From positions 212,699,971 to 212,763,970 of the forward strand of contig NC_085843.1 of the NCBI RefSeq assembly GCF_035594765.1: 64,000 nucleotides of DNA. Reading direction: 5' to 3'. A program made the position numbers and the translations under genes. Positions within the stretch are counted from its first letter, which is position 1, and every line of letters begins with the position of its first letter. Below the pieces are notes generated by a model that made no database searches, was not told where the DNA came from, and saw nothing but the letters and a program-made list of their open reading frames with translations. This document shows, one piece after another, positions 4,790 through 60,641 of this stretch. Source of the DNA: Anolis carolinensis (taxonomy: Eukaryota).

Positions 4790-5835
4790 TTAAATGGTTT
4801 CTGACATGGCAAACTTACCATCATACCCAGACACGACAGAAGTACTGATGGTCAGTTGTAGGGCTGAACAGGGTATTGGGCTGCAACCAGTGCTGGTTGG
4901 GTCCCCCCCTCCCGAAGGAGTAGGTTCACAGTTTGGGGGTCCTCCTGGACTCAATGCTGACCTTGGCAGTGGCCGGGACAACCTTTGCACAGTTAAAGGT
5001 TGTGCGCCCATAGCTCACAAAGCCCAATCTGGCTATGGTAGTATATGTTTTAGTCACATCCAGACTAGACTACTATAACACACTCTATGTGGGGTTGCTC
5101 CAGAAAAGGGTTTGAAAACCAACTGATGCAAAGTTCAACAGCTAGCCTGCTCATGGGAGTAGGATATAGAAAAAGAACTACCCTGCTTCTGAAGCAGCTT
5201 CACTGGCTTCCAGTTTGTTTCTGGGTGCAATTCAAGGTGCTGGCTTTAGCCTATAAAGCCCTAAATGGTTCAGGCCCAGCCTACTTGAGGGACAGGATCT
5301 CTTCCTATCAGTCTGCACGAGCCCTGAGATCATCAGGAGAGGCCCTTCTCTCGGTCACCACCGTCATGAGTACGGTTGGTAGGAATGAGAGAGAGTGCCT
5401 CTTTGGTGGTAGCTCCATCATTTTGGAACTCCCTCCCCAAAGAGGTGCATTTGGCCTCCTCATTACTGGCCTTCCGCTCCCAGGTTAAAACCTTTCTATG
5501 GAAGCAGGCCTTTCCCGACAACCCTTAACAAGCAGGCTATTTTGGTCTGGCAAGGCTCACGCAGCCAAAGATTTGGAGCTTCGAAATTTTGAGTACAATG
5601 TTTTAAGGATAACCTTAGTGGTCTGAGGCCCAGGGATTTTTAATTATAATGATAAATGGTGTTATTTATTACGCTTATTTTATATCATTTATGTAATGTG
5701 TTTATGTAATGTGTTGGTTTATTGTTTATTTGTTTGGGTTGGGAGGATGATGATGTGCTTTTGTATTATGAAATTTCTGTTTAACCATTTGTTCGCCGCT
5801 TTGAGTCCCACTCGTGGAAGAAAAGTGGGATGATG

Positions 5836-6911: not shown

Positions 6912-9673
6912 TTATTTAGCAGGCTGATTAGCCAAGTGTTTTGATGTTCGCATAAGATGTGTTGTTGTGACTCCTAATGTTTTGGTTCATGGTTATTATG
7001 ATTTAGAGACAAATAAGAAGACTGGATTAATTCTAACAATTGCTCATGATACACGCTGTGCCTCATTATTTCTTTGAGCTCCCATCTATATCCTTATCCA
7101 TCTGGTAGCTTGCTTTATTATGGAAACTTTTCGAGCTGGGTAATCTTTTTCATGTTTTTAGCAAGCTCCCTTGTACTGAGTCAGACCAAAAATTGCACTT
7201 GTTCCATAGTCTCTATGCTGACACCTCTCTACATCTTTCTACTGAGGCAATCCTACTTCATAATCTCTCTTTATATAAATGTAATGTGCTGTTTTACTAT
7301 GGAGTAAACTCAGGGCCGGCCGGAGATATTTTTAAATGTTAAGCGGGGGGCTAAAAAGCGCCCCCGCCACCGGCCCCGCCTCCCACGCCCTGGCCCCGCC
7401 TCCCACGCTGTGTGGGAGGCGGGGCCAGGGCGAATAGTGCGGGGGGCGGGGCCAGAGTTGGCCCCGCCCCCCGTGCCCTGGCCGCGACCAGGAAGTAAGG
7501 CCCGAATGGCCTAGCTGTGCTGTGCGCATGCGCACAGCACAGCTAGGCCATTTTGCCCTTAGTCAACAAACTAAGGGCAAAAATGGCCTATCTGGCAGTG
7601 CGCATGCGCACAGCCAGATAAGCCATTTTTGCCCTTAGTTTGTTGACTAAGGGCAAAATGGCCTAGCTGTGCTGTGCGCACGCGCACAGCACTGCTAGGG
7701 CATTCGGGCCTTACTTCCTGGTCGCGGCCGGCGATCGCCCGGGCGATCGCCGGCCGCGACCAGGAAGTAAGGCCCGAATGGGCTATCTGCGCTGTGCGCA
7801 CGGGCACAGCGCAGATAGCCCATTCGGGCCTTACTTCCTGGTCGCGGCCGCCGGCCGCCCGGGCGATCGGCGGCCGCGACCAGGAAGTAAGGCCATTTTG
7901 CCCTTAGTAACAAACCAAGGGCAAAAATGGCTTATCTGGCTGTGCGCATGCGCACAGCCAGATAAGCCATTTTTGCCCTTAGTTTGTTACTAAGGGCAAA
8001 ATGGCCTAGGTGTGCTGTGCGCACGCGCACAGCACAGCTAGGCCATTCGGGCCTTACTTCCTGGTCGCGGCCGGCGATCGCCCGGGCGATCGCCGGCCGC
8101 GACCAGGAAGTAAGGCCCGAATGGGCTATCTGCGCTGTGCACACGGGCACAGCGCAGATAGCCCATTCGGGCCTTACTTCCTGGTCGCGGCCGCCGGCCG
8201 CCCGGGCGATCGGCGGCCGTGACCAGGAAGTAAGGCCATTTTGCCCTTAGTAACAAACTAAGGGCAAAAATGGCTTATCTGGCTGTGCGCATTTATTTAG
8301 CAGGCTGATTAGCCAAGTGTTTTGATGTTCGCATAAGATGTGTTGTTGTGACTCCTAATGTTTTGGTTCATGGTTATTATGATTTAGAGACAAATAAGAA
8401 GACTGGATTAATTCTAACAATTGCTCATGATACACGCTGTGCCTCATTATTTCTTTGAGCTCCCATCTATATCCTTATCCATCTGATAGCTTGCTTTATT
8501 ATGGAAACTTTTCGAGCTGGGTAATCTTTTTCATGTTTTTAGCAAGCTCCCTTGTACTGAGTCAGACCAAAAATTGCACTTGTTCCATAGTCTCTATGCT
8601 GACACCTCTCTACATCTTTCTACTGAGGCAATCCTACTTCATAATCTCTCTTTATATAAATGTAATGTGCTGTTTTACTATGGAGTAAACTCAGGGCCGG
8701 CCGGAGATATTTTTAAATGTTAAGCGGGGGGCTAAAAAGCGCCCCCGCCACCGGCCCCGCCTCCCACGCCCTGGCCCCGCCTCCCACGCTGTGTGGGAGG
8801 CGGGGCCAGGGCGAATAGTGCGGGGGGCGGGGCCAGAGTTGGCCCCGCCCCCCGTGCCCTGGCCGCGACCAGGAAGTAAGGCCCGAATGGCCTAGCTGTG
8901 CTGTGCGCATGCGCACAGCACAGCTAGGCCATTTTGCCCTTAGTCAACAAACTAAGGGCAAAAATGGCCTATCTGGCAGTGCGCATGCGCACAGCCAGAT
9001 AAGCCATTTTTGCCCTTAGTTTGTTGACTAAGGGCAAAATGGCCTAGCTGTGCTGTGCGCACGCGCACAGCACTGCTAGGGCATTCGGGCCTTACTTCCT
9101 GGTCGCGGCCGGCGATCGCCCGGGCGATCGCCGGCCGCGACCAGGAAGTAAGGCCCGAATGGGCTATCTGCGCTGTGCGCACGGGCACAGCGCAGATAGC
9201 CCATTCGGGCCTTACTTCCTGGTCGCGGCCGCCGGCCGCCCGGGCGATCGGCGGCCGCGACCAGGAAGTAAGGCCATTTTGCCCTTAGTAACAAACCAAG
9301 GGCAAAAATGGCTTATCTGGCTGTGCGCATGCGCACAGCCAGATAAGCCATTTTTGCCCTTAGTTTGTTACTAAGGGCAAAATGGCCTAGGTGTGCTGTG
9401 CGCACGCGCACAGCACAGCTAGGCCATTCGGGCCTTACTTCCTGGTCGCGGCCGGCGATCGCCCGGGCGATCGCCGGCCGCGACCAGGAAGTAAGGCCCG
9501 AATGGGCTATCTGCGCTGTGCACACGGGCACAGCGCAGATAGCCCATTCGGGCCTTACTTCCTGGTCGCGGCCGCCGGCCGCCCGGGCGATCGGCGGCCG
9601 TGACCAGGAAGTAAGGCCATTTTGCCCTTAGTAACAAACTAAGGGCAAAAATGGCTTATCTGGCTGTGCGCAT
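6912..9673 (+). repeat. 1381-bp direct tandem duplication (6912-8292 / 8293-9673)
   Basis: All ORF-track entries repeat with a 1381-bp offset. One difference noticed: G7105 versus A8486. Confidence 0.95.
7311..8292. mobile_element. Truncated duplicate of the left part of the palindromic hAT element
   Basis: Same left terminus preceded by AGTAAACT (7303-7310). By eye it matches 8692-9673 and ends abruptly at 8292. Confidence 0.85.
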
Positions 9674-10350
9674 GCGCACAGCCAGATAAGCCATTTTTGC
9701 CCTTAGTTTGTTACTAAGGGCAAAATGGCCTAGGTGTGCTGTGCGCACGCGCACAGCACAGCTAGGCCATTCGGGCCTTACTTCCTGGTCGCGGCCGGCG
9801 ATCGCCCGGGCGATCGGCGGCCGCGACCAGGAAGTAAGGCCATTTTGCCCTTAGTAACAGGATTCTTAGTTTGTTGACTTAGTTTGTTGACTAAGGGCAA
9901 AATGGCCTAGGTGTGCTGTGCGCACGGGCACAGCGCAGATAGCCCATTCGGGCCTTACTTCCTGGTCGCGGCCGGCGATCGCCCGGGCGATCGCCGGCCG
10001 CGACCAGGAAGTAAGGCCCGAATGGCCTAGCTGTGCTGTGCGCGTGCGCACAGCACACCTAGGCCATTTTGCCCTTAGTCAACAAACTAAGGGCAAAAAT
10101 GGCTTATCTGGCTGTGCGCATGCGCACAGCACAGATAGGCCATTTTTGCCCTTAGTTTGTTACTAAGGGCAAAATGGCCTAGGTGCTTGTCGCGGTTTGG
10201 CGTGGGCGCGGGGATTGAAGCCCCGCGGGCCCGCGCCAACACCGGAGGCGTCGGTGGCGCTACGGGGCGCTGTCGACGCCTCGACAGCGCCCCTAGCAGC
10301 CAGCGCCCGAGGCGGCCGCGTCAGCGGCCGCCTAGTAACAACCGGCCCTG
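8692..10350. mobile_element. Complete non-autonomous hAT-type DNA transposon (about 1.66 kb) filled with nested palindromes
   Basis: Termini CAGGGCCGG (8692) and CCGGCCCTG (ending 10350). Perfect 8-bp TSD AGTAAACT at 8684-8691 and 10351-10358. Subterminal GC-rich hairpins, no transposase ORF. Confidence 0.85.
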
Positions 10351-10644
10351 AGTAAACTGCAAAACCACTGAACCAAATCACATCCAATTTGGCTACAAAA
10401 GACATAGTCATCCAATCTATGTCTTTCAAACAAAAAACCTAGAAAAATAAAGCCCAAATTAGAGGACACGAAAGAGCCATTTTCCCCCTTTAGAAACAGC
10501 TCAGAACGGTAGGCCCCGGTCCCTCTAGGACCCGTCCATTTCGTATCCTAGGGCACAGGGCAGAGTGCACTTAGGCATCATCCACACTGCCTATAAAATA
10601 CAGATTATCGGATTTGAACTGGATTATTTGGCAGTGTAGACTCA

Positions 10645-10785
10645 AGTCCCTCCCATACGGCTATATAACCCAGAATGCCAAGGCACATAATCCACAGTAT
10701 CTGCTTTGAACTGGATTATCTTGAGTTCACACTGCCATATAACCCGGTTCAGTGTGGATTTTATACAGCTGTGTAGAAGGGGCCT
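10645..10785. mobile_element. Harbinger-like MITE nested in a related palindromic MITE
   Basis: Ends gtccctcccatacggctatataa and ttatacagctgtgtagaaggggcc are imperfect inverted repeats. Internal motifs cacactgccatataa and tggattat are shared with other MITEs in the window. Confidence 0.55.
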
Positions 10786-10864: not shown

Positions 10865-11560
10865 CAATATAATCTCTAAAATCAGGACAGTAAATAAAGA
10901 ACAACACTCTGAAAACAGGGAAATTCCAAACAGGAAACAATCGGGGCCAGCTAACAACTCCCAACAAAGGATTCCCCCAGGCAGGAAGTATCCAGACTTT
11001 GAAGCTGCAAGGCCATTAAATGCTAATCAAGGTGCCTAATTGCAGCATTCATACTTGCCACACCAAGACTATTAATTGCTGTTCAACCTGGGCAACCAAG
11101 GATTCCACAAGGTAGAAAGTGGCTAGGCTTGTAAGCTGCAAGACTATTCAGTGCAACTCAAGCTGGCCAAACAATGACTCCCCTACAAAGGAAGTAGCCA
11201 GGCTTCAAAGTGGCTCTTTGAATGAGGGTGCTACTCCAGCTCGCCAAACAAGGATTCCCCTAGCTATAACACAGCCAGGCATTGAAGCTGCAAGGCTATT
11301 CAGTGCAATTCAACCAGACTAACAAAGGATTAACCTTGGTAGAAGGCAGCCAGGCTTTGAAGCAGTAATACTACTCTGTATTATTGAAGCTGATCAACCA
11401 AAGATTTCGCTAGATAGCAAGCAGCCAGGCCTTGAAGTAGCAAGGCTATTCATTGCAATTCTAGCAGCCCAAAAAACCATTCCCCTAGAATCAAGTACCC
11501 AGGCTTCCAAGCAGCAAGCCTATTCCATTGTATTCCAGCTCACCAAACAAGAATACCAGC
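10865..11560 (+). repeat. Penelope-derived segment expanded into a degenerate minisatellite of about 75 bp (about 7 units)
   Basis: Recurring caaaggattcccc...agccaggctttgaagctgcaaggctattcagtgcaattcaa. The first unit and its upstream flank resemble the reverse complement of 44230-44410. Confidence 0.7.
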
Positions 11561-57180: not shown

Positions 57181-57750
57181 ATGTTCAGGAAATGTTTACT
57201 GGTCCCATGTTTTCAGGACCCCAACACTGAACAAAGAGAACCCCATTTGGGGTTGGGGCCCACAGTTTAAGGACGTTATCACATGGACTTCTGGCTCCAT
57301 CCAAGAATGCTTCTAAGACTGAGTCCCCTGGAGCCCTTCACATGATGCAGGGCTACTTCTGGAAGGGCTCCATCATGCCACTAGGCAATGTTCAGAAAAC
57401 GTTTACTGTTGCCAAATTTTCAGGACCCCAACATGGAACAAAGTGGAGCCCATTTGGGGTTGGGGCCCGTTATCACATGGGCTTCTGGCTCCATCCAAGG
57501 ATGCTTCTAAGACTGAGTCCACTGGAGCCCTTCTCATGACATAGGGCTACTTCTGGAAGGGCTCCAACGTTTACTGGTGCCAATTTTTCAGGACCTCAAC
57601 ATTGAACAAAGGGGACCACATTTGGGGTTGGGACCCACAGTTTAAGGACCTCAACACATGGACTTCTGGCTCTATCCAAGGATACTTCCAAGACTGAGCC
57701 CCCTGGAGCCCTTCACATAACTTAGAGTTACTTCTGGAAGGGTTCCATCG
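57181..57750 (+). repeat. Three degenerate tandem copies (about 180-205 bp) of the hAT/Harbinger junction
   Basis: gtttactg...ttttcaggacc.caaca...catttggggttggg...cacatgg.cttctggctc.atccaag...ggagcccttc...cttctggaaggg is repeated three times. Confidence 0.9.
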
Positions 57751-60085: not shown

Positions 60086-60641
60086 CAGAGCTTTCCAAAA
60101 TGTGTGTTGGTACACACTAGTGTGTCACCTGTGGTCCCTAGGTGTGTCATGTGAAAATGCTTTCCCACCCCCCTAAAGACTGGTGCTGTTCAAGTGCAGG
60201 TACTGTTATAACTTTTATAATTTGCACAATTTGTTGATTGAGTTGCAGTAATTGCTACTAAAATGGTTAAGTTTCTAACTAAGAAAAGAAAGTTCATTGA
60301 CAATGATGTTTGTGATGAACTACATTGAGAGGCTATAGAGAAAACTACATAAGAATCAACTGTAGCACATAGGTGTAAAGGGAAAAAATCCAAACTTTNN
60401 NNNNNNNNNNNNNNNNNNNNNNNNNNNNNNNNNNNNNNNNNNNNNNNNNNNNNNNNNNNNNNNNNNNNNNNNNNNNNNNNNNNNNNNNNNNNNNNNNNNN
60501 NNNNNNNNNNNNNNNNNNNNNNNNNNNNNNNCTTATAAAGGGTTCATTTCACTAGTTTACCAGTAAAACTGAATTAGCATATCGTGAAAGGATGCATGCC
60601 TAAAAAGCATGCCACCAACATTAAAAGTTTGGAAAACTCTT
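60086..60641. mobile_element. hAT-like element spanning the assembly gap
   Basis: Ends CAGAGCTTTCCAAAAT and AGTTTGGAAAACTCT. Confidence 0.5.
60399..60531. other. Assembly gap (133 N)
   Basis: Run of N. Confidence 1.

What the first reader, a model, noticed from the sequence alone, without database searches (positions are those of the whole stretch)
7311..10350. Mobile CpG island: the palindromes are housekeeping-promoter motifs (NRF1, ETS/GABPA, YY1, SP1)
Seen: eight perfect TGCGCATGCGCA sites (7523, 7599, 7943, 8904, 8980, 9324, 9667, 10115) plus variants at hairpin apices. By my count there are about 22 CAGGAAGT sites in both orientations, many AAAATGGC/GCCATTTT sites, and a GGGGCGGGGC cluster near each left end (about 7370-7470 and 8750-8850). 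CpG is abundant although the surrounding intron is CpG-poor. Established: these match the NRF1, ETS, YY1 and SP/KLF consensus motifs that typify bidirectional CpG-island promoters. Inference: the element may mimic a promoter to stay unmethylated and accessible, and may act as a portable bidirectional promoter or enhancer. Here it lies about 3.4 kb downstream of the 13710 exon, so it could yield antisense RNA or an N-terminally truncated PCDH15 transcript.
Basis: partly seen in the sequence, partly recalled or inferred. Interest (0 to 1): 0.8.

Follow-up and report, generated by a model that had tools for sequence, protein, structure and literature searches.

The report
CpG-rich hairpin transposon with promoter motifs
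A young, non-coding jumping element in an intron of the green anole PCDH15 gene really is packed with sequences that look like housekeeping-promoter sites, but their large numbers come from one short piece copied back and forth, and nothing yet shows that the element works as a promoter or escapes DNA methylation.

Summary
There are 8 TGCGCATGCGCA sites, 22 CAGGAAGT sites, 28 AAAATGGC/GCCATTTT sites and GC boxes near each left end. CpG o/e is 0.92 against 0.23 in the rest of the window.

The stretch is not one element. The true element is 8692-10350: a 1,659-bp non-coding hAT transposon with the 8-bp target duplication AGTAAACT and ends CAGGG...CCCTG. 7311-8292 is its left part, re-copied by a 1,381-bp tandem duplication of flank plus element.

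The interior is a zig-zag of fold-back copies of about 100 nt. Collapsed to 440 non-redundant bases, it holds one ETS core, one YY1 core, two Sp1 boxes and no NRF1 site. The NRF1 palindrome is written wherever two arms ending in TGCGCA meet.

The element meets CpG-island rules by composition. A young LINE in the same window is also CpG-rich. Published anole and axolotl data show that CpG-island-like DNA of this sort is mostly not unmethylated.

The only hint in its favour is that arm-to-arm differences show no excess of CpG decay.

This scan has already noted the same family, and the same reading, on other DNA of this genome.

The parts
8692..10350 (+). Full non-autonomous hAT-type element, 1,659 bp. 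GC 0.62, 152 CpG, CpG o/e 0.94. No long reading frame.
   Evidence: Ends and target duplication read directly. Composition and open frames of at most 110 codons.
8684..8691 (.). Left copy of the 8-bp target-site duplication AGTAAACT
   Evidence: identical to 10351-10358
10351..10358 (.). Right copy of the 8-bp target-site duplication AGTAAACT
8692..8700 (+). Left terminal inverted repeat CAGGGCCGG (begins with the hAT terminal motif YARNG)
   Evidence: hAT definition in PMC3014272
10342..10350 (-). Right terminal inverted repeat, a perfect 9-bp complement of the left one
8692..8866 (+). Left subterminal region (GC 0.74). It holds the only GC/Sp1 boxes (8754, 8774, 8799, 8824-8826, 8842), which are themselves arranged as direct and inverted copies.
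8867..10185 (.). Fold-back (zig-zag) array. It has 12 apices of NRF1 type, 6 apices around CCCGGG and about 10 small loops. It holds 13 ETS cores, 18 YY1-type cores, 5 perfect NRF1 palindromes and 4 one-mismatch ones.
   Evidence: A 381-nt part folds at -244 kcal/mol, z = -33.7.
10186..10350 (+). Right subterminal region (GC 0.75, CpG o/e 1.16). It has short GC hairpins and one EGR-type site, and none of the four motif types of the array.
7311..8292 (+). Partial second copy: the left 982 bp of the element, ending at the centre of an NRF1 palindrome. It is identical to 8692-9673.
6912..9673 (+). Two units of a 1,381-bp tandem duplication (6912-8292 and 8293-9673) covering host flank plus the left part of the element. 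One mismatch (7105 G versus 8486 A).
13633..13848 (-). Context: PCDH15 cadherin-repeat exon. The gene runs on the minus strand, so the element lies in the downstream intron.

Best explanation
This is one recent insertion of a non-coding hAT cut-and-paste transposon in a PCDH15 intron of the green anole. Its left part and flank have been re-copied by a 1,381-bp tandem duplication.

The interior grew by repeated fold-back (mirror) copying of about 100 nt. That master piece carries one ETS-type core and one YY1-type core, and it ends in TGCGCA. Each fold-back at that end therefore writes an NRF1-type palindrome at the hairpin tip. GC/Sp1 boxes sit only in the left subterminal 175 nt. The matches to promoter motifs are genuine, but their numbers (8, 22, 28) are products of copying, not of separate selection.

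The CpG-island composition mainly reflects youth: a GC-rich palindromic element that has had little time to lose CpGs. This is inferred, not shown.

In the animal this copy is most likely methylated and silent, like most CpG-island-like young transposons of cold-blooded tetrapods. It is most likely not a working promoter for antisense or truncated PCDH15 RNA.
For: Anatomy:
- 8-bp target duplication, 9-bp perfect inverted ends and CAGGG termini.
- hAT features as defined for the anole in PMC3014272.

Copying:
- The duplication units differ at 1 of 1,381 positions.
- The array has a 343-bp period built from nested palindromes and resolves into arms of three kinds.
- The non-redundant 440 nt holds ETS x1, YY1 x1, Sp1 x2, EGR x1 and NRF1 x0. 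Per-motif chance values of 0.002-0.08 are unremarkable for a 25-motif panel chosen after the fact.
- The NRF1 site is apex-made and not specially kept. Of 12 apices, 5 are perfect, 4 have one mismatch and 3 are broken. All 14 loop-to-apex arms end in TGCGCA, but only 1 of 9 of the other arm type does.

Youth as the explanation for CpG content:
- The target duplication is intact and the duplicate is near-identical.
- Anole hAT families are mostly under 2% from their consensus and probably arrived by lateral transfer (PMC3014272).
- The only other CpG-rich island in the 64 kb is a young LINE with an intact 663-codon RT frame, CpG o/e 0.63.

Base rates against an unmethylated state:
- CpG-ratio predictions in Anolis reach only AUPRC 0.105 and are 'almost exclusively false positives' (PMC5161304).
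- Overlap between predicted CpG islands and non-methylated islands (NMIs) is poor in lower vertebrates (PMC3583005).
- Axolotl transposons under CpG islands are younger and more methylated (PMC7618676).
- NRF1 binding is itself blocked by methylation (PMC7605266).
Against: - Differences among the arms show no excess of CpG transitions: 4 of 17 variable sites, where 19% of positions are CpG. A 5-fold CpG hypermutability is rejected at P = 0.012 and a 10-fold one at P = 0.0001. For the two 343-bp units the figure is 2 of 8 substitutions. If these differences arose as ordinary germline point mutations, the array's ancestors were not methylated for long.
- CpG o/e of 0.93-1.16 means no depletion at all, which is higher than the young LINE (0.63).
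- In mouse ES cells, GC-rich, CpG-dense inserts with Sp1- or NRF1-type sites tend to stay unmethylated (review PMC8286816).
- The 30-nt block around the ETS core is almost invariant among arms: 1 variable column of 30, against 7 of 20 in the neighbouring block (P = 0.005).
- Bio-CAP maps may miss multi-copy DNA, so the Anolis base rate could be biased.
- No methylation or RNA data were seen for this locus.
Confidence: 0.6

Rival explanations
1. One reading: the element is a working mobile CpG island. Sp1, NRF1, ETS and YY1 bind it, it stays unmethylated and open in the germline, and it can act as a bidirectional promoter or enhancer wherever it lands. Open chromatin may also help it to be cut out and moved.
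For: - The composition passes every CpG-island rule: 1,659 bp, GC 0.62, o/e 0.94, 9.2 CpG per 100 bp.
- NRF1 and Sp1 sites are perfect and ETS cores are good.
- There is no excess CpG decay among arms.
- The ETS-bearing block is nearly invariant.
- In mouse cells, CpG density together with TF sites keeps inserted DNA unmethylated (PMC8286816).
- Repeats carrying YY1 motifs coincide with hypomethylated regions on the Poecilia picta X chromosome (PMC10760456).
Against: - The motif numbers come from copying. At the non-redundant level there are only 1-2 of each motif and no NRF1 site.
- NRF1 apices are the least conserved part of the arms.
- NRF1 cannot bind methylated DNA, so it cannot start the protection (PMC7605266).
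- CpG-island-like DNA in Anolis is mostly not an NMI (PMC5161304).
- Axolotl transposon CpG islands are heavily methylated (PMC7618676).
- A non-coding element needs no promoter of its own.
- No expression or methylation data exist for this locus.
Confidence: 0.2
2. The motifs are inherited cargo. On this view the master piece and the GC-box end are a remnant of the parent hAT's own promoter region, or a piece of a host bidirectional promoter captured by the transposon. This piece was later multiplied by fold-back copying. That would explain why real promoter motifs are present without any present function. It concerns origin and is compatible with the best explanation.
For: - The GC boxes lie only in the left subterminal region, where a transposase promoter would lie.
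- Four different promoter-type motifs co-occur within about 275 nt of unique sequence.
- Anole hobo-type hATs are described as capturing foreign DNA (PMC3014272).
- Unchecked earlier notes of this scan describe anole hATs carrying promoter-like cargo and a YY1-NRF1 mirror palindrome at a host promoter.
Against: - No autonomous relative or host source sequence could be compared, because no tool here searches this genome.
- The closest published families (hAT-N6/N7/N8_AC) are orphans without a known parent.
- The NRF1 site does not exist in the unfolded master piece, so it was not captured as such.
Confidence: 0.2
3. The repeated short sequences and hairpins serve transposition itself, for example as binding sites for the transposase or a host factor, or as cruciform or Z-DNA-prone structure. 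On this view their likeness to NRF1, ETS and YY1 sites is incidental.
For: - hAT transposases are known to bind short repeated subterminal motifs (own knowledge).
- Hairpin stability is extreme, z = -33.7.
- Arms of one hairpin differ from other hairpins yet stay complementary to each other.
- Each NRF1 apex sits in a 16-nt alternating pyrimidine-purine run, and the tandem duplication breaks exactly at one such apex.
Against: - The motifs fill the interior rather than the roughly 170-nt ends, which have a quite different sequence.
- Complementary arms follow automatically from fold-back copying.
- No transposase is known for this group.
Confidence: 0.1

Closest known systems
Orphan non-autonomous hAT families hAT-N6_AC, hAT-N7_AC and hAT-N8_AC of Anolis carolinensis (PMC3014272, Table 1)
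   Same: Same host, with an 8-bp target duplication. The published 12-bp end CAGAGSCGGYCC matches this element's end at 10 of 12 positions. The target AGTAAACT fits their pattern NNTNNANN. These families are non-coding, very young (0.3-1.7% from consensus) and have about 1,000 or more copies.
   Different: Two end positions differ. This element is longer (1,659 bp, against 288-810 bp). The paper mentions no hairpin arrays, CpG content or promoter motifs. The internal sequences could not be compared.
Mouse LINE-1 5'UTR monomer arrays (PMC11602158; PMC7605266)
   Same: Both are CpG-rich repeated units inside a mobile element that carry YY1 and ETS/GABPA sites. TF binding there appears mainly when methylation or deacetylation is removed.
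   Different: The L1 monomers are head-to-tail repeats forming the real promoter of a coding retrotransposon. Here the units are mirror copies inside a non-coding DNA transposon, with no shown promoter activity.
Amplification of transcription-factor sites by MITEs in plants, such as E2F sites (PMC5950925)
   Same: A short non-autonomous DNA transposon spreads ready-made TF binding motifs through a genome.
   Different: The plant MITEs are small and carry one or a few sites per copy. Here one copy carries tens of sites through internal fold-back copying and has CpG-island composition.
Repeat expansion carrying YY1 motifs on the Poecilia picta X chromosome (PMC10760456)
   Same: A recent repeat wave carries YY1 motifs in a vertebrate and is linked to hypomethylated regions.
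   Different: Methylation there was measured by bisulfite sequencing and is sex- and chromosome-specific. No methylation data exist here.
CpG islands overlapping young transposons in axolotl (PMC7618676)
   Same: A cold-blooded tetrapod in which 60-80% of likely active DNA-transposon and DIRS copies are covered by predicted CpG islands. CpG-island composition is thus a usual mark of young elements.
   Different: Those transposon CpG islands were shown to be more methylated in sperm. The state of the anole element is unknown.

Membership tests
hAT superfamily, non-autonomous element | 8-bp target-site duplication | tested here: met
   AGTAAACT at 8684-8691 and 10351-10358
hAT superfamily, non-autonomous element | Terminal motif YARNG and short terminal inverted repeats | tested here: met
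   The ends are CAGGG...CCCTG with a 9-bp perfect inverted repeat. The definition is from PMC3014272.
hAT superfamily, non-autonomous element | No transposase gene | tested here: met
   The longest open frames are at most 110 codons, all within repeat DNA. They were not scanned against Pfam.
hAT superfamily, non-autonomous element | Dispersed copies elsewhere in the genome | not testable with these tools
   No other copy lies in the window. Unchecked earlier notes call the family abundant.
hAT-N6/N7/N8_AC group (PMC3014272) | 12-bp end CAGAGSCGGYCC | tested here: inconclusive
   10 of 12 positions agree with CAGGGCCGGCCG
hAT-N6/N7/N8_AC group (PMC3014272) | Target pattern NNTNNANN (N7, N8) | tested here: met
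   AGTAAACT has T at position 3 and A at position 6
hAT-N6/N7/N8_AC group (PMC3014272) | Internal similarity to the family consensus | not testable with these tools
CpG island by composition (Gardiner-Garden/Frommer and Takai/Jones rules, own knowledge) | Length of at least 500 bp, GC of at least 0.55, CpG o/e of at least 0.65 | tested here: met
   1,659 bp, GC 0.623, o/e 0.94
Non-methylated island / CpG-island promoter (functional) | CpGs unmethylated in germline or soma | not testable with these tools
Non-methylated island / CpG-island promoter (functional) | Transcription start sites or H3K4me3 on the element | not testable with these tools
   No RNA or chromatin data could be reached
Non-methylated island / CpG-island promoter (functional) | Binding motifs of CpG-island promoter factors | tested here: met
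   NRF1, Sp1, ETS and YY1 core matches are present. They are multiplied by copying.
Non-methylated island / CpG-island promoter (functional) | CpGs retained over evolutionary time | tested here: inconclusive
   4 of 17 arm differences are CpG transitions, so there is no excess. The differences may stem from copying errors rather than elapsed time.
MITE in the strict sense | Small size (under about 800 bp) | tested here: not met
   1,659 bp. It is better called a non-autonomous hAT element with an internal array.

The most novel reading that the evidence does not exclude
The family is a true mobile non-methylated island. Most copies would escape germline methylation because of their CpG density and their Sp1, NRF1, ETS and YY1 sites. 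They would bind these factors, seed orphan CpG islands and new start sites across the anole genome, and owe part of their transposition success to that open state. The many young, partly polymorphic insertions would then be a natural genome-wide 'ectopic CpG island' experiment in a non-mammalian amniote.
Probability: 0.12. Interest if true: 0.75.

Novelty: new variant of a known kind. Interest (0 to 1): 0.4.

Why it matters
Transposons that spread transcription-factor sites, and young transposons that score as CpG islands, are both known. What is unusual here is a non-coding DNA transposon whose body is 1.3 kb of mirror-copied DNA carrying the classic housekeeping quartet (NRF1, ETS, YY1, Sp1) at CpG-island density.

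If the copies are methylated, the family helps explain why CpG-island predictors fail in the anole.

If they are not methylated, hundreds of recent insertions at known sites would let one test directly, in an amniote outside the mammals, which DNA features keep an island unmethylated and whether a mobile island can create promoters.

For PCDH15 itself there is no sign of an effect.

Tried and rejected
- **Public reads.** Copy number, presence or absence of the insertion in other animals, reality of the tandem duplication, RNA starts and family-wide CpG decay were therefore not tested. The two short motif patterns were searched only inside the window.
- **Older family copies in the window.** I looked for these to measure CpG decay and found none.
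- **Control for CpG hypermutability.** I compared the young LINE with an older LINE fragment (26725-27929 against 18408-19875). At 27-31% divergence the comparison is saturated and uninformative.
- **Literature on this family.** I found nothing on hairpin arrays, CpG content or methylation of this family in Anolis. PMC3014272 has no mention, and three further searches gave nothing specific.
- **Earlier notes of this scan.** They repeat the same reading on other copies but report no methylation or RNA test.
- **Rejected ideas.** The stretch is not a single 3-kb element. The motif counts cannot be treated as independent events.
Full report
**Observation.**
- TGCGCATGCGCA occurs eight times at exactly the stated places and nowhere else in the window.
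- CAGGAAGT occurs 12 times on the plus and 10 times on the minus strand inside 7311-10350, and only three times in the other 61 kb.
- AAAATGGC and GCCATTTT occur 14 times each, and GC boxes cluster at 7373-7470 and 8754-8851.
- CpG o/e is 0.92 in the stretch and 0.23 in the rest of the window, with the 5-kb flanks at 0.20-0.22.
- The open frame at 13633-13848 on the minus strand is a cadherin repeat whose best solved relatives are protocadherin-15 chains at E 1e-14. The element therefore lies in a PCDH15 intron about 3.4 kb downstream of that exon, as stated.

**Anatomy.** The stretch is not one element.
- The real element is 8692-10350 (1,659 bp). It is flanked by a perfect 8-bp duplication, AGTAAACT, and has 9-bp perfect inverted ends beginning CAGGG. 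This fits the hAT definition used for the anole: 8-bp duplication and YARNG termini (PMC3014272).
- It has no long reading frame.
- 6912-8292 and 8293-9673 are two units of a 1,381-bp tandem duplication differing at one base. The duplication takes in 780 bp of host flank and the left 982 bp of the element, and it ends at the centre of an NRF1-type palindrome.
- So 7311-8292 is a partial second copy and 8293-8691 is ordinary CpG-poor intron (o/e 0.24).
- I could not tell whether the duplication is real or an assembly artefact.

**How the motif numbers arise.** The interior (8867-10185) is a chain of nested palindromes with a 343-bp period.
- A 381-nt part folds as DNA at -244 kcal/mol, against -83 +/- 5 for shuffles, z = -33.7.
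- Cut at its turning points, the array resolves into arms of three kinds that all read along one master piece of about 100 nt. The piece runs from a CCCGGG apex, through a 30-nt block with the ETS core, then either directly or through a small hairpin with the YY1-type cores, to an end reading TGCGCA.
- Where two such ends meet, an NRF1-type palindrome is written.
- In 440 non-redundant bases (both ends plus one arm of each main kind) there is one ETS core, one YY1 core, two Sp1 boxes, one EGR site and no NRF1 site. The chance values of 0.002-0.08 are unremarkable for 25 motifs tried after the fact.
- The huge excess over shuffles of the whole element (13 against 0.02 for CAGGAAGT) is therefore a repeat effect.

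**Motif quality** (consensus forms from my own knowledge).
- NRF1 and Sp1 are perfect matches.
- ETS is a good class-I core, but it is the CAGGAAGT form rather than the CpG-bearing CCGGAAGT typical of housekeeping promoters, which is absent.
- YY1 matches only the short GCCATNTT core, and the long AAGATGGCGGC form is absent.
- Bidirectionality follows trivially from the palindromes.

**Conservation among arms.**
- The 30-nt block holding the ETS core is nearly invariant: 1 variable column of 30, against 7 of 20 in the next block (P = 0.005). The whole block is invariant, not the motif alone.
- The NRF1 apex is the most variable spot. Of 12 apices in the full element, 5 are perfect, 4 have one mismatch that still fits YGCGCAYGCGCR, and 3 have lost a half-site.
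- This does not look like selection to keep NRF1 sites.

**CpG-island composition and its meaning.** The element passes the usual rules: GC 0.62, o/e 0.94, 9.2 CpG per 100 bp. Four points bear on what that means.
- Youth is enough to explain it. The target duplication is intact. Anole hATs are mostly very young and probably arrived by lateral transfer (PMC3014272). The closest published ends belong to hAT-N6/N7/N8_AC, at 0.3-1.7% from consensus.
- The only other CpG-rich island in these 64 kb is a young LINE with endonuclease and reverse-transcriptase frames, o/e 0.63.
- In Anolis, predictions from CpG ratio reach an AUPRC of only 0.105 and are described as almost exclusively false positives against testis Bio-CAP maps (PMC5161304; PMC3583005).
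- In axolotl sperm, transposons under predicted islands are younger and more methylated, and 60-80% of likely active DNA-transposon and DIRS copies are covered by islands (PMC7618676).
- NRF1 binding is restricted by methylation, and YY1 and GABPA reach L1 monomer arrays mainly when methylation or deacetylase activity is removed (PMC7605266).

- In mouse cells, GC-rich CpG-dense inserts stay unmethylated, and TF sites such as Sp1 matter for this (review PMC8286816).
- Within this element, differences among arms show no excess of CpG transitions: 4 of 17 variable sites where 19% of positions are CpG. Five-fold hypermutability is rejected at P = 0.012.
- The two 343-bp units differ by 8 substitutions, of which 2 are CpG transitions, among 36 CpGs.
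- This would fit a germline-unmethylated history. However, half the differences are transversions, and they may be copying errors made at the fold-back events rather than time-dependent decay. I count the test as inconclusive.

**What could not be done.** After that I kept the element's letters out of all outside searches. No tool here searches this genome, so other copies were not seen. The window holds none.

**Earlier notes of this scan.** These are unchecked. They describe the same hairpin-array hAT family many times on other DNA of this genome, call it abundant and young, report one insertion missing from four other individuals, and twice give the same 'portable CpG-island promoter' reading. 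None reports a methylation or RNA test.

**Verdict.**
- The element is a young non-autonomous hAT transposon with a fold-back array, plus a tandem duplicate.
- The promoter motifs are real matches multiplied by copying.
- The claims of promoter mimicry and promoter action are untested, and on published base rates more likely wrong than right (about 0.2 for an unmethylated state, about 0.1 for promoter action).
- It is a new variant of known kinds: site-spreading non-autonomous transposons and CpG-island-like young transposons.

Noticed in passing
window 6912-9673: A 1,381-bp tandem duplication of host flank plus the left part of the element. The units differ at one base (7105 G, 8486 A), and the junction lies exactly at the centre of a TGCGCA|TGCGCA apex with at most 1 nt of microhomology. 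It could be real or an assembly artefact.
   Followed up: partly
window 8901-8918 and every other NRF1-type apex: Each perfect apex sits in a 16-nt strictly alternating pyrimidine-purine run (TGTGCGCATGCGCACA). Such a run can in principle adopt Z-DNA, which might help explain why fold-backs and the duplication break there.
   Followed up: no
window 8870-8881 and the other 21 ETS cores: The ETS core is followed by AAGG, so each copy also reads GAA|GTAAGG. This resembles a 5' splice donor with GTAAG at +1 to +5. About half of the copies are in the sense of PCDH15.
   Followed up: no
window 10199-10207: A perfect EGR-type site (GCGTGGGCG) lies in the right subterminal region. That region is otherwise made of short GC hairpins and has the highest CpG o/e of the element (1.16).
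   Followed up: no
window 25374-27820 (+): A young LINE with an endonuclease frame (159 codons) and an intact 663-codon frame holding a reverse-transcriptase domain. GC is 0.55 and CpG o/e 0.63. An older, 27-31% diverged fragment of a related LINE lies at 18408-19875.
   Followed up: partly
window 10961-11546: Six copies of a 75-79-nt tandem repeat (63-73% alike) lie just right of the insertion. A SINE-like stretch lies at about 10480-10700.
   Followed up: no
window 57191-57749: Three tandem copies of a unit of about 184 nt (63-86% alike).
   Followed up: no
window 5120-5289, 19596-19765, 27650-27819, 36589-36758: Four dispersed copies of a 170-nt repeat (65-71% alike), probably an older SINE or a LINE tail.
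   Followed up: no
window 60399-60531: A run of 133 N (assembly gap or mask), left untouched.
   Followed up: no
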